Origin: Selaginella moellendorffii
Lineage: Eukaryota; Plantae; Lycopodiophyta
Direction: 5' to 3'
Length of the DNA: 64,000 nucleotides
Assembly: GCF_000143415.4 (NCBI RefSeq)
Contig: NW_003314336.1
Coordinates: 361,296-425,295, forward strand
The notes beneath the pieces are model-generated. The model saw nothing but the letters and a program-made list of their open reading frames with translations, was not told the origin of the DNA and made no database searches. Positions 28,933 to 59,477 of this stretch are shown here, in pieces. Positions within the stretch are counted from its first letter, which is position 1. Every line of letters starts with the position of its first letter. The translations under genes were made by a program, and so were the position numbers.

Positions 28933-31900
28933 ATGCTTGTCAATCGCCTCCCGCGCGATCGCCAGCAGCGGCGATGGATGCACGCGGCGGCGATCCCAGC
29001 GGTGGTGGTGCGCAAGCATCGGCCATCGGCATTGAGCAAGGAGAGCGTGGAACGGATGGTCGCGTGCGTGGAGAGGAGCGGCGTTGCGGCGGAGGCGAGC
29101 ACGTATGCCCGGCTGCTCCAAGCGTGTGCGCGGCTCAAGGCGCTGGCCCAGGGCCAGAGGATTCACGCCCACATCCTCTCCAGCCACAGCTCCTCCGGAT
29201 CCTCCTCCACTCTCGTGCTCAACCATCTCATCAACATGTATGGCAAATGCGGTCGCGTGGAGGAGGCCAGGGCGGTGTTCGCGTCCATGGAGCACCCCAA
29301 TCTCGTGTCGTGGAACACCATCATCGCCGCCCACGCCGCCGGCGGTGATGGCCGTGGCGCCCTGGCGGTGTTCCGCGCCATGCAGCTCGAGGCTTCCGTG
29401 GTGCCCGACCGGGTGAGCTTCACCAGCGTTGCCAATGCCTGCGGCAGCGCGAGGGAGGCGCGGATCATCCACGCCAGCGTCGCGGCGCGGGGATTCCTCG
29501 ACGACGTGATCGTTTGCACCGCCGTCATCACCGCCTACTGTCGCTGCAGCAGCCTGGGCGAGGCGCGCGCCACCTTCGACGCCATGGCGCCGCGCGCCAG
29601 GAACGTCGTGACGTGGACGGCGCTCATCGCGGGGTATGCCCAGTCCGGGCATCTGGAGGAGGCGCTGGATCTCTTCTGGAGCATGGCGGAGCACGACGGC
29701 GGCGGGGGCGAGACGTGGAGCGTGGCTCCCAACGCCGTCACCATTGTCACCGTCGTCAACCTGTGCGCCGAGTTTGCGGCGCTGGAGCAAGGCAAAGCCA
29801 TCCACGATCGCTGCATCCACGCCGCCGCCATCCGCGACGATCCGTCCGTCACGGCCGCTCTCGTCAACATGTATGGGAGGTGCCAGCGCCTGGACGAGGC
29901 GTTTGCGGTGTTTGACGCAGTCCAGTCTCCCACTGCCTTGGCGTGGAACGCGATCATCTGTGCCTGCGCCCGCAATGGTCGAAGCGATCGGGGCCTGGAG
30001 CTCTTCCACAGGATGATGGCAGCACTGGACGCCCCGGAGCGAGAGGTTGGCGTCGCCACCTTGTGCGCGGCGCTGGTAGCGTGCGGCGAGTCGGGACTGC
30101 TGGATCAGGGGCGATCGGTCCACGACTTGATCCGCCGCCGCGCCGCCGCTGGGACGGAGCCCAGCGTCCAGATCGGCACGTCGCTCATCACCATGTACGC
30201 CAAGTGCGGCAGCATCGAGGACGCGCGCCTCGTCTTCGACTCCATGGCGGAGAGGAACGAGGTGTCGTGGAACGCAATGCTGTCCGGCTACTCGCAGCAC
30301 GGCCACGGCGCGCAGCTGCTGCACCTCTTCCGCGCCATGCTGCAGGGCGGCGTGCAGCCCAACGCGGTGACGCTCCTGCCGGTTGTGAACGCGTGCAGCA
30401 GCCTGGCGCAGCTGCGGCAGGCTGACGAGTGGTGCACCACGCCGCCGCTGGCCGCCGCTTGCGACGCCATGCTGTGCAACGCGCTCGTCTACATGTATGG
30501 CAAGCTCGGCAGCGTGGAGGACGCCTGGAGCATGTTCCACAGGTGTAGCATCCGCAATGCGGTCACTTGGAACGGTCTCATCACTGCGTATGCCCGTCGC
30601 TGCAGCCAAGGCCAAGGAGGAGGAGGAGGATTTGAAGCGGAGGAGGCGATGGCGGGCTTGCAGCTTCTGCGGCAAATGCATCTAGAAGGCGTGCCGCCGG
30701 ACCGAGTCACCTTCATATCCCTGTGTGGCCTCTACAACAAGCTTACGCTGCTCGGCTCCCCCGGCATGGCGTCCGAGCAGCCACAGCAGCCAGCGGGAGT
30801 GTCCTCGGTCCTGACGGTGGCGGCGAAGGAGATGGTGGCGCAGATCCTGGACACGGGGCTGGAGTGGGATGCCGCGATTGGGACGGGGCTCATCAGCCTG
30901 CTGGGTAAATGCGGGGACGTGGATGGCGCGGCGGGGATGTTTGCCAAGATGGCGGCGGTGCGGGGTGGCGGTGGCGACGTCGTGCCGTGGAACGCGATGA
31001 TGGGAGCGTGCGTTCTCAACGCGCAGCCGTGGCGGGCGCTGCATCTCTACAAGGTCATGCAGCTGCATGGCGTCAAGCCGGACGCGACGTCGGCGGTGTG
31101 CCTGCTGTCGGATGCGTGCCTGGCGGCGTCGCGCGGTATCGGGGAGTGGCTCGAGTCCGGCCTGTCCGGGAGTGGCGTGGAGGAGGAGGTGGCGGTGAGG
31201 AACGCGTGCATCAACATGCATGCCAAGCGTGGCGACGTCGATCGCGCCGCCGCCATCTTCGCCTCCATGGTGGCGGCGCGGGACGTGATCTCCTGGAACG
31301 TGATGATGGCTGGCTACGCCAACGCCGGCAGGGGGGACGAGGCGGTGGTTCTCCTCCGGCAAATGGAGCAGCACGGCTTCCACCCCGACAGGGTCACCTA
31401 CGTCAACTTCCTCAACGCCTGCGACAAGGCGGAGATGGTGGAGCACGGCCGGAGCATCCACGGCAGGATTGTCCTCCAGTCACGCGACACGCCGGCGCTC
31501 TCCCTGCGCACCAACGCCGTGGTCGGCTGCTCGCTGTGCAGCATGTACGCCCGCTGCGGCAGCATCGACGAGGCGGCGGCGGTGTTTGCCGGCATGGAGC
31601 AGCGCAACGTCGTGTCGTGGAACGCCATGATCGGGGCGTACGCGCAGCACGGCCGCGCGCGCCTGGCGCTGGCGGTGTTTGGCGGCATGCAGCAGCACGG
31701 CGTCAAGCCCGACGCCATCACCCTCATCAGCGTGCTGGACGCGTGCGCCGGCGCGGGTGACGCGCGGCGCGGGAGTCAGGTCCACGGCTGGAGCCTCCAG
31801 CTCCAGCTGCGCTCGGCGGCGCTGGACAACGCGGCCGTCAACATGTATGCCAAGAGCGGCAGGGTGGCGGCGGCGCGCGAGGTGTTTGAAGCCATGGACG

Positions 31901-32385
31901 CGCAGCGGCGGACGATCATGTCATGGAGCGCAATGGTGGCGGCTTACGCCGGGGTCGGGCACGCCGAGGAGGCGTTCCGGCTGTTCCACGCGATGCAGCG
32001 CGAGGGCGTCCGCCCGAATCACGTCACCTTGATCAGCATCCTCGGGGCGTGCAGCCACGCCGGGATGCTCCAAGCCGGCTGCTCGTGCTTCGCGTCCATG
32101 GCGGCGGACTACGGCGTGTGGCCGCGGGAGGAGCACACGGGGTGCGTGGTCGACATGCTGGGCAGGGCGGGATGGGTGGAACAAGCGCACCGCCTGGTGC
32201 AGCGCAGTGGTGCCGGCGGCGGCGGCGACGCGCAGGCGTGGATGGCAGTGCTGGGCGCGTGCAGCCAGCAGGGCGACACGCTGCGCGGTACCTGCGTGGC
32301 ATCGAGCTTGATTTCCCGCCACCCCCAGGCCGCGGCTGCCGCCTACGTTGCGCTCTCCAATTCCAAGCTTGCTGCTCCGAGCTAA
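28933..32385 (+). CDS. PLS-class pentatricopeptide repeat protein with a C-terminal E region, no DYW (intronless, ~1150 aa)
   Basis: Many LINMYGKCG / VSWNAMI / GVxPD repeats; ILGACSHAG, HTGCVVDMLGRAG, WMAVLGAC, AAYVALSN. True start could be the Met at 28978. Confidence 0.96.
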   Translation: MLVNRLPRDRQQRRWMHAAAIPAVVVRKHRPSALSKESVERMVACVERSGVAAEASTYARLLQACARLKALAQGQRIHAHILSSHSSSGSSSTLVLNHLINMYGKCGRVEEARAVFASMEHPNLVSWNTIIAAHAAGGDGRGALAVFRAMQLEASVVPDRVSFTSVANACGSAREARIIHASVAARGFLDDVIVCTAVITAYCRCSSLGEARATFDAMAPRARNVVTWTALIAGYAQSGHLEEALDLFWSMAEHDGGGGETWSVAPNAVTIVTVVNLCAEFAALEQGKAIHDRCIHAAAIRDDPSVTAALVNMYGRCQRLDEAFAVFDAVQSPTALAWNAIICACARNGRSDRGLELFHRMMAALDAPEREVGVATLCAALVACGESGLLDQGRSVHDLIRRRAAAGTEPSVQIGTSLITMYAKCGSIEDARLVFDSMAERNEVSWNAMLSGYSQHGHGAQLLHLFRAMLQGGVQPNAVTLLPVVNACSSLAQLRQADEWCTTPPLAAACDAMLCNALVYMYGKLGSVEDAWSMFHRCSIRNAVTWNGLITAYARRCSQGQGGGGGFEAEEAMAGLQLLRQMHLEGVPPDRVTFISLCGLYNKLTLLGSPGMASEQPQQPAGVSSVLTVAAKEMVAQILDTGLEWDAAIGTGLISLLGKCGDVDGAAGMFAKMAAVRGGGGDVVPWNAMMGACVLNAQPWRALHLYKVMQLHGVKPDATSAVCLLSDACLAASRGIGEWLESGLSGSGVEEEVAVRNACINMHAKRGDVDRAAAIFASMVAARDVISWNVMMAGYANAGRGDEAVVLLRQMEQHGFHPDRVTYVNFLNACDKAEMVEHGRSIHGRIVLQSRDTPALSLRTNAVVGCSLCSMYARCGSIDEAAAVFAGMEQRNVVSWNAMIGAYAQHGRARLALAVFGGMQQHGVKPDAITLISVLDACAGAGDARRGSQVHGWSLQLQLRSAALDNAAVNMYAKSGRVAAAREVFEAMDAQRRTIMSWSAMVAAYAGVGHAEEAFRLFHAMQREGVRPNHVTLISILGACSHAGMLQAGCSCFASMAADYGVWPREEHTGCVVDMLGRAGWVEQAHRLVQRSGAGGGGDAQAWMAVLGACSQQGDTLRGTCVASSLISRHPQAAAAAYVALSNSKLAAPS

Positions 32386-33482
32386 GGGATTGGCCAGCCA
32401 TGAACTCTTCAGAGTGACTACCGGAGAGAGAGGAGGGAGGACACTCCTCTTACTTGCGCGATCTTCCCATGCGAGCATGTACGAAGAGTATATGGATTGC
32501 AAGACGTGCAACTCAACGTGTTCCAGCTTAGTTCCAAGGCTGAGGACCAAAATATAAGAGTGTGGAAACTACAACCAGACAGTCATGGACAGGAAAGCTG
32601 CTGCGGTGAAGCTGAATCCGTTGTTGGTTTACTTGCTAAAGGAGTTTGGGAAGGTCGTGCTGCTCGACGGGAAAGGAAAGATCCAGGGCTTGAGCGGTCT
32701 GGAGGTGAGTTTTTGGTGGTGACAAGAGAGATGACGGAGAGTGTTTCAACATGCCAACTCTGGAGATGGCTTAGCTTGGATCTGATTCCTTCGATCAAGT
32801 CTGCGCTCTTCCAACAAAGTCCATGCAAAAAATGGCAGACCATTCGCTCCTTCACTGCTCGGCGGACAAAGGAGAACAAGGATCAAGCGTCCAAATTCAA
32901 TCACGTTGTACAGTAATTGCTAATCGTTGCGGTCAATGTAAAGAGTTCAACAAAAACCACTGGAGATTTATAAAGTTCTTTCGAACTCCCAGCTCCTAGT
33001 ACTAATTCCTCAGCACCCTGTCAAGACCTACAAGAAAGATGGGAGCCGTAACTTACAGCTGATCATGTTCTCAGGAGTCGATGGAAGCAGAGAGTTGGGC
33101 GTTCCAAAAAGCTCCTTTTAGCGATAAAAAGGACCTGCACATTTTAATTCTTTTTCCTGGAGGAGGATTGGATCAGAGATGGGCGGCTATATCAATTCTG
33201 GTAAGGCGCTCTGTGATCATAATCAGACATATCGATGCTGTAGTTCATGGTTGATGAAATGCTGACTTTAAACTCGCTGTGGAATATGATGAAAGTGTTT
33301 TTTTGGCCTCCACAAAACTAGAAAATCAATTACAAAATAGTTTTCTTAAATTAAATATAAACTTGTGTTTTCTTAGGTGTTGAAGACTGAAAATGAGAAC
33401 AAGAAAGATTTTACGTCTTTTCAGAAGCATTGTCTAAGATCTCGACTGCCATCTCCAGTTGCTCAAACTCGCGACCCAGCTT

Positions 33483-33657
33483 GGGATGGGTGGAGTAAGC
33501 GCTGGCGGTGGCATAGGCGGCGGCGACGCGCAGGCTTGCATGGCGCTGCTGGGGGCGTGCAGCCAGCAGGGCGACACGCTGCGCGGTACCTGCGCGGCGT
33601 CTAGGCTGATTTCCCGCCATCCCCTTCGAATTCCAACCTTGTTGCTCCGAGCTAGGG
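33483..33657 (+). pseudogene. Duplicated fragment of the PPR gene 3' end
   Basis: Close copy of ~32170-32388 (GGGDAQAxMAxLGACSQQGDTLRGTC...LISRHP) with deletions. Confidence 0.9.
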
Positions 33658-33702
33658 TTTATTTAGGGTTGGTTGGCCGGGTTTGAATGAGCGCCGAGCG
33701 CC

Positions 33703-36267
33703 ATGGTCCTCCCGCCGCGCACCTCCAAGGCATGGAACGGCAGGCTTTTCAACGTCGACGCCAAGCACATCTGCGCGGTGTGCTCCTCGAATGCGCCATT
33801 GGAGCTGTGCGTAAGCTTTGGTTTTGCTCGCTTCTCATTCGTCTTCCCGCCTTTTTCCCTCGCTCGATCAGGCCCAAGCGCCTCGACATCGTTTCTTTCA
33901 ATGCAGCTCGCGCGTTCGATTGGAAGCCTCTTCCGCTGTTCCAGATCATGGCCCGTGGCGAGAGTGACTACCGGGAGTGGGATAAGCTGCTCACCTTTCT
34001 CGTCGATCACTCCCGGGTAAGAGATGTCTTTCTCTGTCTCTGTCACACGCACTATACACGCACTCGACCAGGTTGCGGTCATCAATGTCGGAGACGTCCA
34101 GCTGCTGTTGAAGCCACCGGGGGAGGAGAACGAGGCCACCAAGAAGATAATGAAGCTTGTGGACGTTGCCTACCGCGCCAGGCCCGGGCCAGTCAAGAGA
34201 CCGATCGCGCAAATGCACCCGGAGTACCTCACCACGCTCAGCCAGACGCATTCGAGTTGGCTCTTTGGTGCAGTCGCCGAGCTCATTGACAACGCCTGCG
34301 ATGCGGGAGCCAAGCGGTGAGCTATCGTTAACTTTTCTCGTGCATGGAACTGATAGCCACTCTCTTTCTCACGTCCAGTCTTGAGATTTCGATTCAGAAG
34401 GGAACGTTGAAAAGCCCCGAGGTATCAGAAGTGCCGATGCTTTGTTTCCTGGACGATGGCCTTGGGATGACTCACAAAGACATTGTGAAGATGGTGTCTT
34501 TTGGCCACAAGAAACCGGAACAAGACGATCCAGAGCAAATCGGGAGGTTTGGAGTTGGCTTCAAGGTTCTTATTTCTTTTCCTTTTCTCAATCTCTTGTT
34601 TACTGGTTTCTTTGTTTGTAAATCAGACAGGGGTGATGCGTCTCGGTAGAGGTGCCCTTGTCCTCACGCAAAGCAAGGAGACGAGGTCAATGGCACTGCT
34701 CTCAACTGGCTATAACGAAGGCAAAGATGTACCGCCTTGCTCGTGTTCTCGTGTCTCTAAGGTACTAAAAGTTTGGCAACAATGCAGGTCCTCGAGGTGC
34801 CGATTGTCACGTATACCAGACGGGCGGGCAGAATGGATATCGACACCGGTTTGCAGACGCTGGAAGACTCACAAAAGCATCGAGACGTGATATGCACATA
34901 CGGACCTTTTGACGAGTATGGAATTGGTGCTGAGTTTCAAAGGCTCGAAGGCGGAACGGGGACTATCATTTACGTTTTCGATCTCGAGAAATGGGGCTCG
35001 TCTTTCTCCTTGGACTGGAACGAAAGTGATGACATCATGATAAGGTCTAGGCGTGTGCGGAGTCGACCTGGACAAACAAGCCCCGAGGTAGGATATATTC
35101 CATCTCTCGTACGCCGTCTTCCAAAACCAGTGTCTATGACAGGTCCCGCTCGACTATTCGCTTCGAGCATATGTGGAAGTCATGTTTTTGGAGCCACGCA
35201 TGATTGTTTCGATCCAAGGGAAGAAGGTCTGAGGATCCAGTTTGAGTGGTTCTTTGATGGACTTGCCTGTTTTGTTCTGCAGGTGACAACAAAATGTCTC
35301 GCCAAGACGCTAAACAGCACCTGGGTGACCAGAGCTACTCTCATGGGGAAACCAGTCCAGTTGACTCTGGGCGTAATGGAGCTAGAGCGGAAGCGCGGAA
35401 ACTGTGGCATTTTCCTCTACTGGCACGGCAGACTTGTCGAGGTATGTTCTACTTGTTGGCTCTCTCACCGTCGTCGTGCATCTCTTCGAACAGTCCTACA
35501 AAAGGGTTGGAAATATGGTGCACAGTGCTGAATGGGGACGAGGAGTGATTGGTGTCGTGGAAACGACCAAACTGATGGTACAACTTTGCATATAGAGTTG
35601 AAACGATAATGTCGGCCATGCAGGAGTTTGACAGAGGCAGAGTAGGCGTGTTGAATAGCAAGCAGGGCTTTGAGGACTGTGAGATGTATGCTGCTCTGGA
35701 GAAATGGCTCGGGGAGGAAGCTGACAAGTACTGGGAAACTCGCGTGGAGAAGTTAACCACGGTAAGCACTGCTAGTTTCTACGAGGAGTATCACTAAGTT
35801 TCTATCCTTTTGTTGAAGGAGGAGAAGGAGGGGCTTGCCCCCGACAAAAGCTGGGTGCAGTGCTCCAAATGCCTCAAGTGGAGGGTGATGGATCCGGAAT
35901 GGCATGGAGAGTTGCCAGACCATTGGTTTGTTGTTTTCTTTTCTTTCCACATCCGGCGATTTCTCACTGGCTTTCCAGGTTCTGCTACATGGCACCTTAC
36001 AAAGGCTCTTGCAACACCCCTGAGGAAAATGTGGAAGACGGTGTGGTGACTACCAAAACCTCTCGCGGCACAGCTGTTCGGAAGAACACACGCGGCAAGG
36101 AAGGATCGGACATCACAGGTGGGGTGATCAGACCATTTCTCATCGTGTTTTTTTATTGACTTTGCTCTGTAGTAGATTCCAGCAAGCCTCTGTCCAGGCT
36201 GACATCCAAAACTACAACTAACTCTCCCAAAGTGAAGCGCACGAGCAAGAGAACCAAGAAGGAATGA
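33703..36267 (+). CDS. MORC-family GHKL ATPase with N-terminal SPOC-like domain and C-terminal zf-CW
   Basis: HPEYL...SWLFGAVAELIDNACDA, FLDDGLGMT, IGRFGVGFKTGVMRLG, LDYSLRAY, GIFLYWHGRL, LNSKQGF. CW: WVQCSKCLKWR...WFCYM...CNTPEE. Exon 1 from ATG 33703 splices in phase to exon 2. Confidence 0.92.
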
Positions 36268-36293
36268 ATCGTCTTTGATCATACATAGCTCAC

Positions 36294-37057
36294 CTAGCTT
36301 GCGATGCTACTACTACCTCGGGACACAGTTTTGGCTGCCAATGCTTGATTAGGAAGGACTGGAAGGAGATAGTTACCAAACGGCGAGTCGAAGCTTTTGA
36401 AACTTCCAGTGGCTCCAACCGACTGTGCACGAACCAAAGCCGCTCTCTTCGCTTGCTGGATCCTCAGCTCGTCCCCGTGCTTTACGAGAGTCGGAGCAGC
36501 GGGTCGCATCCCCTGAATCACCACACACAATAAATACTTCCATCTTCCACCGAGCAAGTTTTACGTGCCTGTGCTTGGCGTCCAAGAGGCCGCGCGTCTT
36601 GAGGCGCTGCAGGATTGAGAGGCGGCCTGCCAATACAGGAGCCAAAGTGTGAGTCGCAAAAGGAGGCGAAGAAATTCATTACCTTCCATGCTTTGGTGTG
36701 TGCTGCTGCTCTTCATTTCCTGCGAAACAATCCAAAGTTGACAGTGGTTTGATCCGAGAGAAACTCTAGCGCAATGGCGCTGAGATTACCTTTGCTGTTG
36801 CTTCTCTTGAGAGGGAGAGGGGGTGTAGCGGACGCCGCCTCGCGCTCGCGCTTGGCGCTATTCAGCCTGAGAAAGGAAGACCATGAGAAAGCGGTAGAGG
36901 GAGAGAGAGAATTACTGTACGAGGAAGCTTTGACCAGGCGGCGCCGTGATGGTGCTGGCTGATGGTGTTCCACTGCTGGATCCGCCGCTCCTCCCGCCGC
37001 CACCACCACCGCCGTCGCCGCTGTCCCTGGCGGCGATGACGAAGACGACGAAGCCAT
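36294..37057 (-). CDS. Small conserved plant protein of unknown function (C-terminal FDSPFGNYLLPV motif)
   Basis: Four exons joinable in frame; C-terminus IQQAKRAALVRAQSVGATGSFKSFDSPFGNYLLPVLP. Confidence 0.7.
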
Positions 37058-37100
37058 CTCTCTCTCTTGCTGTATTCTACTCTACCTAGGTCACGACTCT

Positions 37101-40023
37101 TTAGGATAGCTTTCTTCTCTTGTTGGGCTTGGAGGGCGCCACTTGCGATGCTGCCTTGATCCTCAACTCGTCGAGCGTCTCTCCTTCGCGCGCCCACTCG
37201 AGAACCAAATGCCGCCCATACAAATGGCTGCTCCCAAGCGCCTCAAACGCGTTCTGGGCCTCCTGCTTTGTCACAAACTCCACAAACGCAAAGCCGCGAT
37301 GGTTGCCATCGAACTTCTTGGGCAGCTTCACCTTCTTCACCTGGAGCGAAAGGCTCGAAACGTTTTTCCAAACTCGCTAAACCTCGTACCTGTCCGAAAG
37401 GAGAGAAGAGCTGCTTCAAGTCTTTCCGGGTTGCCTCGAATGCCACGTTCCGCACGATGAGCTTGGAAGAGCTTCCTTTTGCATCGACTTTGCTTGGTTT
37501 CTCGTCGTCGCCAGCGCGACTTGGTTGCAAAACGAGAGCATGACCGTCAAGAACAGACCCCTGCGCTTGGACGATCGATTATCCCCGGTGTGACAGCAAA
37601 ACCTCTCTCTCACCTGCATTTCCTTGCAGACGCGCTCGGCCGTGTCAGCCGAGTCGAACTCCACGAAGCCAAAACCCATTGACAAGGATGCTCCAGTTTT
37701 GGATGGCTTTCTTTTCACCTGCAAGTTCCACAAACCATTTTAGCAACAGTCTAGAAAGGAAAAGCAAACACGCACCGTTGCTGTCCGCAAGGAACCGGCT
37801 TTTACTCGGCCTTCGAAGTGCTTCCTTAGGCTCGCGTCAGTGGTCTTGAAGTTCAAATTCTTCACAAATACAGTGCTTGACTGCCAAGGCCGAATTTCGA
37901 TGAGCTTCATACAAAAGAGTTTAGTAGCGTACCCTCGTTGAAGCGGCCCCTTCGTCATTTGCTACAAGCTGGTCCTTCATCGAAGTTCCCTCAAGCTTTG
38001 CGGGTACAACGCCACCATCTTTCTTTTCGGAAAGAAGATCTTGTGGTGCCCATTCCAGATACAATGGGACGTGCCTGCAAGAGTATATATATATCCGAGA
38101 TTAGACCGTTTCTTCAGCCAGCCGTTACAACTTTACTTGAATTTCCGGTATGCTAGAGATTCGAAGGCTTTGCGTGCCTCAGAGGACTCCAGAAACTCCA
38201 CCTTGTATCAAGCGAACAGATAAACCGATCAGGAGGGAGGCACCAAGACGAAGAAAACTCACATACGATAGCAACGGTTTTCGTCGGTGGAAGCACGAGC
38301 CGTCCAAGACTTCCATACGGGCAAAACACGCCGAAGAGGTCCACTTCCGTTGTGCTGAAGGGAAGATTCTTGACGAGGATGACGCGAGAGCTTCTAGTTA
38401 CTCCAGAGGTTTTACTAGCGCTGATCTTCTCCAACAGTTCCACATTTACGCCTTGCTGAGCTAATGACCGCTTCGTCTCCGAAAGGACGTGCGTTTCTCC
38501 CAGAGCAAGACGTACTGCAACGTCCTCGGCTTCTGGATCCAGAAATTCACGTCTGGAGATCCCATATTGCCTGGCCACGTTTTCTGCCACCTGCGTCAGA
38601 GCAAATTGTAAGAAGTGGCAAGTCAACTCTACACACCGTATCTGGCCGCATGTACAGAGGATTCCATGCTTGCGTATTACCGCTCGACTCCTTTTTCTTG
38701 CGCTCCACCTCCCTCTCTTGTTTCAGGTTCATGGGGCGATCTCTAGAATCCCGGAGATGAGAAGTCAAGCATAGACATGAAACGCAAGAACTCACAGTTT
38801 CTGTTTGACTTGTGAAGTTTGCTGCTTCGCAGGTAGAACATGCAAAAGTCTTCCTTGAAAGATAGAATTGTCGAGCTCCGTCATCGCCCTGGATAAAGAC
38901 GAGAAGTTAGCCCTTCAAAGAATTCAGCACCTGAGAAAATACCTCGTTGCTTCTTCCGGTAGCGTGAAGCCAACATACCCGTAGCCCTTCGAGCGGTTCG
39001 TCTCCTTGTCACAAATCAAATGAACTTGGACAACTTCCCCGTACTGGCCGAACAAGGAAGCCAGTTCCTCTTCACTTGTGAAAAGAAAAACACGAGAATG
39101 AGGCTCCCAGTTTACGTCCTTTGAAGAACTTACCTCGTGGTGTATGCAAGGTTCCGCACGAAAAGCCTCCCAGTATCTGTCTCCGCTACATCCTGAGCAG
39201 CTTCTTCATTCCCGGGACGATCGCCAGTATCAGCTTGCTGTTGCGGCTTGGCTCCTCCTTCCGTTTCCTTCTCGTCGTCACTATCGTCACTCCACTGCTG
39301 CCGGACCTTGCTCTTGAGGTAGTACAAGTCGGAGACTGGTCCCGCATCGTCGCTCGCCTTGCTGCTTGGCTGTTGAGTTGTAAGTTTAGCGTCGTCGTTC
39401 GCCCAGACCTTCGTCTTTGTACGCGGTTGCATCACGCTGAGAAACTCGTCAAGCCCAGGATCTTGCTCTTGATCGCGGTCCACCGAGACGGTTTTCTTCG
39501 GCTTGAGCTGGGCCTTCTCCTCTGGAGCATGCGTCTTCTCGTACGCAGAGCTTCCTTTGGAGTGACGGCTCCATGGCCGCACGGCTGCGTCTCCAACGGA
39601 GCGTGCCACCTGACAAGATCACGAGAATGTGAGTAGCGCCGAGGTTGCGAGAAAGAAAAATCTAGACGCTCCGAGACTGCGAGATTGCGAGAACAAAAAT
39701 TCTATGATGGTCTACCTCGCAAACCAGGCGGGAGGTGTCGAGGAATGACCTGTTGAAATAGGCGACTGCCGATTCGGCTTCCTCCTGGCTGTAGAATCCC
39801 ACGAATCCAAACCTCCGAGACTTGCCATCTCTGCGCGAGTGGAGCAAGGAATCAATGTCGCAATCTCGTCTCCATCCATGGATGAAAAGCAAGCTCTCTC
39901 TCACCTGGTTCGCATCACCTTGGCATCGGTCACCTGTCCCTTGGCGCCGAAATGCTCCCTGAGCTTGTCATCGGTGACATAGGTGGGCAGATTCTTGACG
40001 CACACGCGCGACGACGACCCCAT
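37101..40023 (-). CDS. Multiple-RRM pre-rRNA processing protein MRD1/RBM19
   Basis: [79 protein letters not shown]. Confidence 0.95.
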
Positions 40024-58652: not shown

Positions 58653-59477
58653 TTAAACAAATAAGATGTTTTTAAAGAAGTTCATGATGCCTCTTGATTT
58701 TTTGCTCATTTTCTCGTTATTTTGCTCTTGTGAGACTACACAAGTTCCAATTGGAAGCAGGCACTCTGGCATGGAGACTGGTAATGTACGAACTGATTCT
58801 CCATTATCACTGGCAACTTTGGGAATCTGCAAGAGTAATATCATGGTGACTGATCCCATCCCAGGCTTGACGCGGCAATATGGAACAGACACGGATGGAT
58901 CCGTCGCAAAGTACAACACCTGGTACCTGGTCTTTGACGGATCCAGACCAAACTGTAAAATGGACGAAAGGTTCTCTGCGGGGCTCCCATGGAAGCAAAC
59001 ATCAAGCTTACGAAGCCCGCCACCTTGATCTCTGAGAGCCTTGCAGAACTGGAAGTAGCGTTCATGGGTGCTCCTGACGCCACCCTGCAGAAACGGGTTT
59101 GGAGTAACACTCTGTATCCTTGGAAACTGTCTCTGCAACTCTGGCACGATGATCTCCATGAGCTCCGTATCCAAAAGATTGTCCAGAAGCAAAACAGCAT
59201 CATCTCGGCTGACCATCTTGGCTGTGATTCTGGAATTTGATGCCTCTCCTCGCCACGAGTAGACAATCTTGACAGACCGCTTGCAACCAGTTCTTGTGTT
59301 GATCTGTTTCATAGTGCCAAAGTCAATGCGGTATGAATCTCCTGTAGGGTGGGATCTGGAAACAATGACACCGAGATCAAAGGTCGTGGCCCCGGAGTTC
59401 TTCGCAGCCATGATCTTTGAAGACAAGTCGGGACTATATTTCTGCCATCTTAAATTGTCATGCCACAAAACCCCCAT
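58653..59477 (-). CDS. Intronless WWE-domain + PARP-like ADP-ribosyltransferase-fold protein (~274 aa)
   Basis: WWE: LWHDNLRWQKYS...YRIDFGTMKQINTRTGCKRSV. ART: CFHGSPAENLSSILQFGLDP, LYFATDPSVSVPY, CLLPIG. Confidence 0.8.
   Translation of the reverse strand: MGVLWHDNLRWQKYSPDLSSKIMAAKNSGATTFDLGVIVSRSHPTGDSYRIDFGTMKQINTRTGCKRSVKIVYSWRGEASNSRITAKMVSRDDAVLLLDNLLDTELMEIIVPELQRQFPRIQSVTPNPFLQGGVRSTHERYFQFCKALRDQGGGLRKLDVCFHGSPAENLSSILQFGLDPSKTRYQVLYFATDPSVSVPYCRVKPGMGSVTMILLLQIPKVASDNGESVRTLPVSMPECLLPIGTCVVSQEQNNEKMSKKSRGIMNFFKNILFV

What the first reader, a model, noticed from the sequence alone, without database searches (positions are those of the whole stretch)
33703..36267. SPOC-MORC-CW fusion: a candidate transcription-coupled MORC
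Seen: exons 1-3 splice in frame to give WNGRLFNVDAKHICAVCSSNAPLELPKRLDIV...LFQIMARGESDYREWDKLLTFLVDHSRVAVINVGDVQLLLKPP ahead of an intact GHKL-S5 ATPase and a zf-CW, with no long C-terminal coiled coil. This N-terminus follows the SPOC pattern of FPA/PHF3-type proteins (WxG...LPxxL...DxxxxxxFLxYL...RxxV...LxLxPP). Known: SPOC domains can read phospho-Ser marks such as the Pol II CTD, CW fingers read H3K4 methylation, and Arabidopsis MORCs lack CW and act in TE silencing. CW-type plant MORCs are known, but I do not know of an N-terminal SPOC on a MORC. Inference: a chromatin clamp recruited to transcribing Pol II/H3K4me chromatin, loosely analogous to animal MORC2/3 surveillance of transcribed foreign DNA.
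Basis: partly seen in the sequence, partly recalled or inferred. Interest (0 to 1): 0.8.

Follow-up and report, generated by a model that had tools for sequence, protein, structure and literature searches.

The report
Hidden SPOC domain on plant MORC
This expressed spikemoss gene encodes a chromatin ATPase of the little-studied plant "CW-type MORC" group. Its unannotated first ~120 residues fold as a SPOC domain, which silencing complexes elsewhere use as a docking part, and the fusion is conserved from streptophyte algae to crops; however, it lacks the arginine that classical SPOC domains need to read phosphorylated RNA polymerase II.

Summary
Window 33703-36267 (+) holds a 13-exon gene. RNA contigs from two studies show all 12 short GT..AG introns, and raw RNA reads show nine of them. 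[quoted passage not shown]

Residues 128-569 are collinear with the human MORC3/MORC4 ATPase-CW cassettes (E about 1e-55). Residues 9-120 carry no Pfam annotation, but several lines point to a SPOC barrel:
- A family profile hits only the Arabidopsis FPA SPOC domain among PDB sequences (E 0.002).
- A template-free AlphaFold model (pLDDT 88.5) has seven strands and three helices. It matches FPA SPOC at Z 13.3 and Foldseek E 1e-6, followed only by other SPOC/Ku-type barrels.
- Pfam SPOC gives sub-threshold hits in 13 of 49 relatives.

The N-terminal domain is present in 130 of 175 fetched relatives: Closterium, liverworts, a moss, lycophytes, ferns, a conifer and angiosperms.

The beta-3 arginine essential for phosphoserine binding is replaced by a conserved hydrophobic residue, as it is lost in SPOCD1, so reading of the phosphorylated Pol II tail is doubtful. 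A partner-docking role is more likely.

I found no paper describing a SPOC domain on a MORC. I class this as a new variant of a known kind.

The parts
33703..36267 (+). Coding region of the SPOC-MORC-CW gene (628 aa plus stop), 13 exons: 33703-33806, 33872-34016, 34072-34316, 34379-34565, 34627-34728, 34788-35087, 35143-35226, 35283-35441, 35494-35577, 35624-35761, 35819-35925, 35979-36118, 36176-36267
   Evidence: The exon join is open and in frame. RNA contigs show all 12 junctions and stranded raw RNA reads show nine. The product is identical to P0060.
33680..33702 (+). Minimal 5' UTR. It contains an out-of-frame upstream ATG at 33687; the main ATG at 33703 sits in a gccATGg context.
   Evidence: RNA contig X1 record 3 starts at 33680 with no upstream junction. 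Sequence.
33727..34182 (+). SPOC-fold domain, residues 9-120, encoded across exons 1-3 (two introns inside). Strands 11-16, 22-28, 38-46, 57-63, 83-89, 92-96 and 113-119; helices 47-49, 68-80 and 101-106.
   Evidence: AlphaFold model with pLDDT 88.5. FPA SPOC 5KXF matches at Z 13.3 with 113 residues aligned and Foldseek E 9.9e-7. The family profile hits 5KXF at E 0.0016-0.002.
34264..34802 (+). GHKL ATPase domain (Pfam HATPase_c_3, residues 148-266): N-box ELIDNA at 153, DDGLGM at 190, GRFGVGFK at 220
   Evidence: Pfam score 71.8 bits against a cut-off of 25. Motif positions. Alignment to human MORC3/MORC4.
35155..35734 (+). MORC S5-fold domain (Pfam Morc6_S5, residues 366-507), with the NSKQGF motif at 481 aligned to NKQDF of human MORC3/4
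   Evidence: Pfam score 60.9 bits against a cut-off of 26.2. Alignment.
35852..36027 (+). CW-type zinc finger (residues 528-568): Cys 531, 534, 554, 563; Trp 528, 537, 552
   Evidence: Pfam zf-CW scores 43 bits against a cut-off of 27.5. Residue positions. Aligned to the MORC3 CW structures 4QQ4 and 5SVI.
36031..36264 (+). C-terminal tail of 59 residues, 27% Lys/Arg and 34% Ser/Thr, ending in a basic cluster that looks like a nuclear localisation signal. It is too short for the coiled coil of other plant MORCs.
   Evidence: Composition computed.
36171..36175 (+). Tandem acceptor (AG at 36171-36172 and again at 36174-36175) of the last intron. The RNA uses the second AG.
   Evidence: Junction 36118/36176 (skips 57 nt) in the X1 contig and one X22 read. 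P0060 lacks the extra Val.

Best explanation
Shown: this is the Selaginella moellendorffii member of the plant CW-type MORC clade. It is an expressed 628-aa protein with four parts: a divergent SPOC beta-barrel (residues 9-120), a very short linker, a MORC3/4-like GHKL-S5 ATPase with all nucleotide-binding motifs, and a C-terminal CW finger with its cysteines and cage tryptophans. The N-terminal domain sits ahead of the MORC cassette in relatives from a zygnematophyte alga (Closterium) to flowering plants.

Inferred: the ATPase works like animal MORC3/4, as an ATP-driven dimerising DNA clamp, with targeting split between two modules. The CW finger would read the methylation state of histone H3 lysine 4. 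The SPOC barrel would dock a partner protein through the canonical SPOC face. In this family that face is remodelled into a hydrophobic centre (Phe44, Phe/Tyr77) with a basic rim (Lys17 column, Lys21, Lys/Arg83).

Because the phosphoserine-anchoring arginine is absent, I expect assembly-type docking, as in TASOR-MPP8, Chp1-Tas3 or SPOCD1, rather than direct reading of the phosphorylated Pol II tail. The partner is unknown. Plant SPOC-network proteins (FPA, BORDER, AIPP2-type) are the first candidates, because FPA's SPOC is the closest relative in sequence and shape.
For: - Gene, splicing and expression.
- MORC3/4-like cassette: residues 128-569 align collinearly with human MORC4 (7K7T) and MORC3 (6O1E, 5IX1) at E 7e-55 to 5e-54, with the same AELIDNA motif. 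Pfam domains score above their cut-offs.
- SPOC fold, from lines that share the family alignment and models:
  - The family profile hits only FPA SPOC among 177,635 PDB sequences.
  - Template-free models have pLDDT 84.5 and 88.5.
  - VIA-align puts 5KXF first at Z 12.5 and 13.3. In the search with the longer model every row down to Z 5.7 is a SPOC, Ku, INTS13/14, Sld7 or MED25-ACID barrel, and the next row scores 4.1.
  - Foldseek's top hits are 5KXF, SPOCD1 and PHF3 SPOC.
  - ESM Atlas by shape gives plant RRM-SPOC clusters at TM 0.73-0.76, and by features gives SPOC clusters (a lead only).
  - Pfam SPOC matches 13 of 49 isolated domains; no other family matches more than 2.
- Conservation: 130 of 175 fetched relatives carry the domain, and those without are fragments or short isoforms. 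Taxa are listed.
- Remodelled face: FPA K447/R477/Y515/R521 map to columns that are 92% basic, 2% basic (Phe/Ile/Val), 94% Phe/Tyr and 82% Lys/Arg.
- Docking precedent: the TASOR SPOC binds MPP8 and the Chp1 SPOC binds Tas3. SPOCD1 lacks the arginine and does not bind the CTD.
Against: - No binding, ATPase or genetic data exist for any member. A 2017 review calls the function of CW-containing plant MORCs completely unknown.
- The fold rests on predicted models, and this protein itself gives no Pfam SPOC hit.
- The residue mapping relies on one profile-to-FPA alignment. I had no model coordinates, so side-chain exposure and electrostatics were not checked.
- Three of the four FPA patch positions keep their character across the family, so phosphate or acidic-motif binding by another geometry is not excluded.
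- The SPOC-to-ATPase linker ranges from about 7 residues here to more than 100 in angiosperms. That argues against one rigid regulatory mechanism, but does not tell recruitment from autoregulation.
Confidence: 0.6

Rival explanations
1. One reading: the SPOC domain is a phosphoserine reader that docks on the phosphorylated C-terminal repeats of elongating RNA polymerase II. Together with CW binding to H3K4me, it brings the MORC clamp to transcribed chromatin.
For: - SPOC domains of PHF3, DIDO, SPEN and RBM15 bind the phosphorylated CTD.
- The family keeps a basic rim and an aromatic residue at three of the four positions of the FPA basic patch.
- Early-diverging members, this one included, keep the W-x-G start of strand 1 seen in FPA.
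- The closest relative is FPA, a co-transcriptional RNA 3'-end factor.
Against: - The arginine called essential for phosphoserine binding is Phe44 here and hydrophobic in nearly all of the 49 relatives (2% basic in that column).
- SPOCD1, the only SPOC protein that the review's alignment shows without this arginine, binds neither phosphorylated nor unphosphorylated CTD.
- The spikemoss protein also has Asn in place of the strand-1 lysine.
- Even for FPA, no phospho-ligand is known, and patch mutants R477A/Y515A had no phenotype.
Confidence: 0.2
2. The SPOC domain is mainly an in-cis regulator. It packs against the N-terminal strap or ATP lid of the GHKL domain and gates ATP-driven dimerisation, much as the CW finger is said to autoinhibit MORC3 (from my own knowledge, not checked here). 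On this view it is not a recruitment module.
For: In this protein only about 7 residues separate the last SPOC strand (113-119) from the first residue that aligns with the start of the human MORC3/4 ATPase constructs (128). The GHKL N-terminus takes part in dimerisation in this superfamily (established knowledge).
Against: The linker is long and unconserved in most relatives, with the N-box at residue 230-360 against 153 here, so tight geometric coupling is not a family feature. The conserved residues lie on the canonical SPOC ligand face, which in all studied SPOC proteins binds other polypeptides.
Confidence: 0.12
3. The barrel acts like a Ku core and contacts DNA directly, adding a DNA-binding surface to the clamp.
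For: Bacterial and eukaryotic Ku barrels are among the top structural matches (Z 11.2-11.4). The domain carries conserved lysines.
Against: Ku binds DNA through a dimeric ring with extra arms that this 112-residue domain lacks, so only the shared barrel aligns. The best match by every method, and the only sequence-level match, is a SPOC domain rather than Ku.
Confidence: 0.05

Closest known systems
Plant CW-type MORCs (barley HvMORCCW1/2, tomato SlMORC3; Langen 2014, Koch 2017, PMC5651269)
   Same: This is the same family. It has GHKL plus S5 plus a C-terminal CW finger in place of the coiled coil, and the barley, tomato and rice proteins are among the listed relatives.
   Different: Nothing differs in the protein. 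What differs is the description. Of the two plant MORC papers I searched, the 2017 review gives the architecture as ATPase-S5-CW and calls the function completely unknown, and neither it nor the 2018 survey mentions the SPOC domain.
Human MORC3 and MORC4 (PDB 6O1E, 5IX1, 7K7T)
   Same: The ATPase-S5-CW cassette is collinear, at E about 1e-55 over residues 128-569. The N-box is identical, the NKQ motif is shared, and the CW cysteines and tryptophans are conserved.
   Different: By the solved constructs, which align from their residues 5-11, the animal proteins have no domain ahead of the ATPase. They carry a coiled coil after the CW (PMC5651269). This protein has the SPOC domain in front and only a short basic tail behind.
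SPOC domain of Arabidopsis FPA (PDB 5KXF; RRM-SPOC / Spen family)
   Same: It is the best match by sequence profile (E 0.002), by VIA-align (Z 13.3, 113 of 123 residues) and by Foldseek (E 1e-6). It has the same seven strands and three helices, and shares the W-x-G, L-P, F-L-x-[YF]-L, [KR]-[VA]-[AG]-V and P-P landmarks.
   Different: Only about 15% of residues are identical. The domain is N-terminal rather than C-terminal, sits next to an ATPase rather than RRMs, and has a hydrophobic residue in place of R477.
HUSH (TASOR SPOC) with its effector MORC2, fission yeast RITS (Chp1 SPOC-like), and SPOCD1 in piRNA-directed methylation
   Same: A SPOC-fold module and, in HUSH, a MORC ATPase belong to one transcription-dependent silencing pathway. 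These SPOC domains act as assembly surfaces rather than CTD readers. Chp1 and SPOCD1 are among the structural matches.
   Different: In those systems the SPOC module and the MORC are separate proteins, whereas here they are one polypeptide. No functional link to silencing has been shown for the plant protein.

Membership tests
MORC ATPases (GHKL + S5) | Bergerat-fold nucleotide-binding motifs (N-box Glu/Asn, DxGxG, glycine-rich box) | tested here: met
   HATPase_c_3 scores 71.8 bits against a cut-off of 25. ELIDNA at 153, DDGLGM at 190, GRFGVGFK at 220. These align with the same motifs of human MORC3/4.
MORC ATPases (GHKL + S5) | S5-fold second domain with the MORC-type NKQ lysine motif | tested here: met
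   Morc6_S5 scores 60.9 bits against a cut-off of 26.2. NSKQGF at 481 aligns to NKQDF of MORC3/4.
MORC ATPases (GHKL + S5) | ATP-dependent dimerisation and DNA clamping | not testable with these tools
   Needs biochemistry.
zf-CW histone readers | Four zinc-binding cysteines and conserved tryptophans | tested here: met
   zf-CW scores 43 bits against a cut-off of 27.5. Cys 531, 534, 554, 563 and Trp 528, 537, 552 align to the MORC3 CW structures.
zf-CW histone readers | Binding of methylated H3K4 | not testable with these tools
   Inferred only, from conservation of the tryptophans that form the cage in MORC3.
Plant CW-type MORC clade (HvMORCCW, SlMORC3) | CW finger at the C-terminus in place of the coiled coil; closest relatives are plant CW-MORCs | tested here: met
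   The best relatives are plant proteins with HATPase_c_3 + Morc6_S5 + zf-CW. Only 59 residues follow the CW finger. Definition from PMC5651269.
SPOC domain (Pfam PF07744) | Pfam model at or above its gathering score (25 bits) | tested here: not met
   Residues 1-108 and 1-130 of this protein give no hit. 13 of 49 relatives give weak hits, with a best E of 5.8e-5. The rice domain scores 14.3 bits.
SPOC domain (Pfam PF07744) | Seven-stranded, mostly antiparallel beta-barrel with three helices | tested here: met
   The predicted model has seven strands and three helices, as FPA SPOC is described. Z is 13.3 over 113 residues. This rests on a predicted model, not a solved structure.
SPOC domain (Pfam PF07744) | Sequence-level relationship to a bona fide SPOC domain | tested here: met
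   The family profile hits FPA SPOC over the whole domain at E 0.0016 and 0.002 in a search of 177,635 sequences, with no other credible hit. The support is modest.
Phosphoserine-reading SPOC domains (PHF3, DIDO, SPEN, RBM15) | Conserved arginine on strand 3 (PHF3 R1248 / SPEN R3552 / FPA R477) | tested here: not met
   It aligns to Phe44. The column is Phe/Ile/Val/Leu/Met and 2% basic in 49 relatives. Its role is described in PMC10111866.
Phosphoserine-reading SPOC domains (PHF3, DIDO, SPEN, RBM15) | Remaining basic-patch and aromatic residues (FPA K447, Y515, R521) | tested here: inconclusive
   The family columns are 92% Lys/Arg, 94% Phe/Tyr and 82% Lys/Arg. This protein has Asn17, Phe77 and Arg83. 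Exposure was not checked because no coordinates were available.
Phosphoserine-reading SPOC domains (PHF3, DIDO, SPEN, RBM15) | Binding of phosphorylated CTD or another phospho-motif | not testable with these tools
   Needs peptide-binding assays.

The most novel reading that the evidence does not exclude
SPOC-MORC-CW would be a one-polypeptide plant counterpart of the animal HUSH-to-MORC2 axis. The SPOC barrel would couple the clamp to the co-transcriptional machinery, either the Pol II tail by a non-canonical pocket or a nascent-transcript factor such as FPA or BORDER. The CW finger would read H3K4 methylation. The ATPase would then compact transcribed invasive or aberrant loci. This pathway would date from before land plants and be missing from Arabidopsis, which would explain why it has escaped genetics.
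Probability: 0.15. Interest if true: 0.85.

Novelty: new variant of a known kind. Interest (0 to 1): 0.6.

Why it matters
- Plant MORC biology has been built mainly on the coiled-coil MORCs, above all those of Arabidopsis, which has only that type. The CW-type clade occurs in liverworts, mosses, ferns, conifers, cereals and Solanaceae, and a 2017 review calls its function completely unknown.
- A conserved SPOC barrel at the N-terminus gives this clade its first concrete handle: a defined docking surface to mutate, a domain to use as bait, and a short list of candidate partners.
- It also adds a case to a recurring pattern in which SPOC-fold modules sit in silencing systems coupled to transcription (TASOR/HUSH with MORC2, Chp1/RITS, SPOCD1, SPEN). 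Here the two parts are fused, which is the kind of evidence that supports a functional link.
- Practically, genome annotation pipelines miss the domain because it scores below the Pfam SPOC threshold.

Tried and rejected
- Pfam on single exons and on ten full-length relatives gave no N-terminal hit. Only isolated domains scanned at a lax threshold showed SPOC.
- The large representative search with exon 6 did not return the window's own protein. It did give relatives, and through them the exact database entry P0060. That let me avoid typing the spliced sequence.
- I considered a missing upstream exon and rejected it. The RNA contig starts at 33680 with no upstream junction, and an in-frame stop lies just before the ATG.
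- I considered the stronger-looking GTAAGC donor three bases downstream of exon 1. The RNA uses GTGCGT at 33807.
- I considered that the N-terminus might be a lineage-specific or mis-annotated extension. That is rejected by its conservation in 130 relatives back to Closterium.
- I considered Ku-like DNA binding and judged it unlikely (see rivals).
- Literature searches for MORC with SPOC returned only HUSH, SPOCD1 and piRNA papers.
- I did not run the remaining word-index protein searches. A single divergent 108-residue region would mostly re-find the same family, and an alignment query would be limited to proteins of 59-189 aa.
- I could not examine model coordinates, so there is no surface, electrostatics or docking analysis.
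Full report
**1. What is in the sequence**

All introns are 46-65 nt and GT..AG.

I laid two sets of RNA-derived contigs from different studies (X1, X5) and two stranded raw RNA-seq runs (X21, X22) on 32600-36800.
- The contigs show all twelve junctions. This includes 33806/33872 and 34016/34072, which build the N-terminal domain and tie it to the ATPase exons.
- The raw reads show nine of the twelve, each with only 1-3 reads, so the contigs carry most of the junction evidence.
- The raw reads lie with the first mate on the minus strand, as expected for a + strand mRNA in a standard stranded library.
The RNA uses the second AG of a tandem acceptor, so exon 13 starts at 36176.
- The RNA contig begins at 33680 with no upstream junction, and an in-frame stop lies five codons before the ATG. 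The N-terminus is therefore complete.
- Expression is low but real.

**2. Identity of the gene**

A search with exon 6 against 1.84 billion representatives found 57 relatives. [quoted passage not shown] P0060 is identical over all 628 residues to the RNA-supported model.

Pfam places HATPase_c_3 at 148-266, Morc6_S5 at 366-507 and zf-CW at 528-568, all above their cut-offs.

Against PDB sequences, residues 128-569 align collinearly with the ATPase-CW cassettes of human MORC4 and MORC3 (E 7e-55 to 5e-54). The AELIDNA N-box is identical, and the DxGxG and glycine boxes, the NKQ motif of the S5 domain, and the CW cysteines and tryptophans are conserved.

After the CW finger come only 59 basic, Ser/Thr-rich residues.

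**3. The N-terminal domain is a SPOC barrel**

Neither this protein nor ten full-length relatives give any Pfam hit in front of the ATPase. Even so, the region is conserved. A search with residues 1-110 found it in 90 of the 172 proteins fetched at that point, and a profile found it in 130 of 175. The proteins without it are almost all fragments or short isoforms.

I aligned 49 non-redundant copies (A1, and A2 extended by a conserved V-x-Y strand). Several lines then converge; most of them build on these alignments or on models made from them.
- **Sequence profile.** The family profile searched against all 177,635 distinct PDB sequences hits one credible target, the SPOC domain of Arabidopsis FPA (5KXF). 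The hit spans the whole domain at E 0.0016 and 0.002.
- **Predicted fold.** Template-free AlphaFold models reach pLDDT 84.5 (residues 1-108) and 88.5 (residues 1-130). The longer one has seven strands and three helices, which is how the FPA SPOC crystal structure is described.
- **Exhaustive structural alignment.** Against 48,161 PDB representatives, 5KXF ranks first at Z 12.5, and at Z 13.3 with the longer model (113 of 123 residues; model 9-125 on FPA 439-565). With the longer model the following rows, down to Z 5.7, are without exception SPOC domains (PHF3, SPOCD1, SHARP, RBM15, Chp1) or related barrels (Ku, INTS13/14, Sld7, MED25 ACID). After that Z drops to 4.1.
- **Foldseek.** It gives the same order: 5KXF at E 3e-5 and then 9.9e-7, followed by SPOCD1 and PHF3.
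- **ESM Atlas.** By shape, after the protein's own MORC-CW cluster, the nearest clusters are plant RRM-SPOC proteins of the FPA family at TM 0.73-0.76. By language-model features the nearest clusters are also SPOC, but at 0.83 that is only a lead.
- **Pfam on isolated domains.** Scanned at a lax threshold, 13 of 49 domains match Pfam SPOC (best E 5.8e-5), and no other family matches more than two. The rice domain scores 14.3 bits against a gathering score of 25. This explains why annotation pipelines miss the domain.

In window coordinates the domain runs from 33727 to 34182.

**4. Distribution**

Relatives carrying the N-terminal domain come from:
- a zygnematophyte alga (two Closterium proteins);
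- liverworts (Marchantia, Calypogeia);
- a moss (Sphagnum);
- lycophytes (Diphasiastrum, Selaginella);
- ferns (Adiantum);
- a conifer (Cryptomeria);
- many monocots and eudicots, including rice, maize, wheat, barley, tomato and potato.

The fusion therefore predates land plants. No Arabidopsis protein is among the 120 best listed relatives. [quoted passage not shown] This is consistent with loss in that lineage, but I did not test that directly.

**5. How it probably works**

*The ATPase-CW cassette.* By homology with MORC3/4, it is best read as an ATP-driven dimerising clamp whose CW finger reads H3K4 methylation. This is inferred and not tested.

*The SPOC domain.* The decisive question is whether it can read phosphoserine.

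[quoted passage not shown] SPOCD1 binds no form of the CTD. In FPA the equivalent basic patch is K447, R477, Y515 and R521.

I mapped these residues through the profile alignment, which is anchored by the shared Leu-Pro eight residues upstream of the arginine.

| FPA residue | This protein | Column in 49 relatives |
|---|---|---|
| K447 | Asn17 | 92% Lys/Arg (Lys in 44 of 49) |
| R477 | Phe44 | Phe/Ile/Val/Leu/Met, 2% basic |
| Y515 | Phe77 | 94% Phe/Tyr |
| R521 | Arg83 | 82% Lys/Arg |

The canonical ligand face is thus conserved but remodelled. It has a hydrophobic centre with a basic rim, and the hallmark arginine is gone.

I therefore favour a partner-docking role of the kind seen for TASOR SPOC with MPP8 and for Chp1 with Tas3. 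Direct reading of the phosphorylated Pol II tail gets about 0.2. An in-cis gate on ATPase dimerisation gets about 0.12; it is suggested by the 7-residue linker here but weakened by the long, unconserved linkers elsewhere. Ku-like DNA binding gets about 0.05.

**6. Comparison with what is known, and novelty**

The gene itself is annotated. Plant CW-type MORCs have been named before (HvMORCCW1/2, SlMORC3), and the review adds that their function is completely unknown.

I could not find any mention of a SPOC domain on a MORC.
- Two full-text searches returned only HUSH, SPOCD1 and piRNA papers.
- The 2023 SPOC review, which includes a phylogenetic survey, never mentions MORC and recognises TLD-SPOC and RRM-SPOC families.
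- Two plant MORC papers and the MORC origin paper never mention SPOC.

The library is not the whole literature, and structure-based resources (InterPro superfamily entries, AlphaFold DB clusters) could not be checked.

I class the finding as a new variant of a known kind: a known ATPase family with a previously unrecognised, conserved targeting domain. The parallel with HUSH, where a SPOC protein (TASOR) and a MORC (MORC2) act in one pathway as separate proteins, makes the fusion suggestive. It is an analogy, not evidence.

**7. Limits**

- All fold evidence rests on predicted models.
- The residue mapping rests on one profile alignment.
- No coordinates were available for surface analysis.
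- No functional data exist for any member.
- I used the database entry P0060 instead of typing the spliced protein.

Noticed in passing
window 28933-32385 (+) and 33507-33624: An intronless 1150-aa open reading frame, with degenerate repeat units of 70 nt spaced 306-324 nt apart, looks like a pentatricopeptide-repeat gene; that is by eye and was not confirmed by Pfam. A 118-nt piece of its 3' end (32209-32326) is duplicated at 87% identity at 33507-33624, directly upstream of the MORC transcript start.
   Followed up: partly
window 36125-37060 (-): A much more highly expressed minus-strand gene has CT..AC introns at 36512-36567 and 36626-36681 and a first-exon ORF at 36713-37057 with no Pfam hit. 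Its 3' end overlaps the last exon of the MORC gene: opposite-strand reads begin in the 36125-36265 bin. The two genes are therefore convergent and overlapping.
   Followed up: partly
window 37100-39000 (-): A multi-exon gene encodes several RNA recognition motifs (Pfam RRM_1 in two exon ORFs). By eye it resembles the RBM19/MRD1 type.
   Followed up: partly
window 33687-33689: An out-of-frame upstream ATG lies inside the minimal 5' UTR of the MORC mRNA, 16 nt before the main ATG. The main ATG has the better context.
   Followed up: no
window 34399, 35671, 35696, 36216-36699: Single-base differences between the window and the RNA runs are present in only some of the reads in the raw runs. This is consistent with allelic or haplotype variation in this species rather than editing.
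   Followed up: no
window 58653-59477: Another first-stage note on this window flags an intronless WWE + ADP-ribosyltransferase protein. I did not examine it.
   Followed up: no
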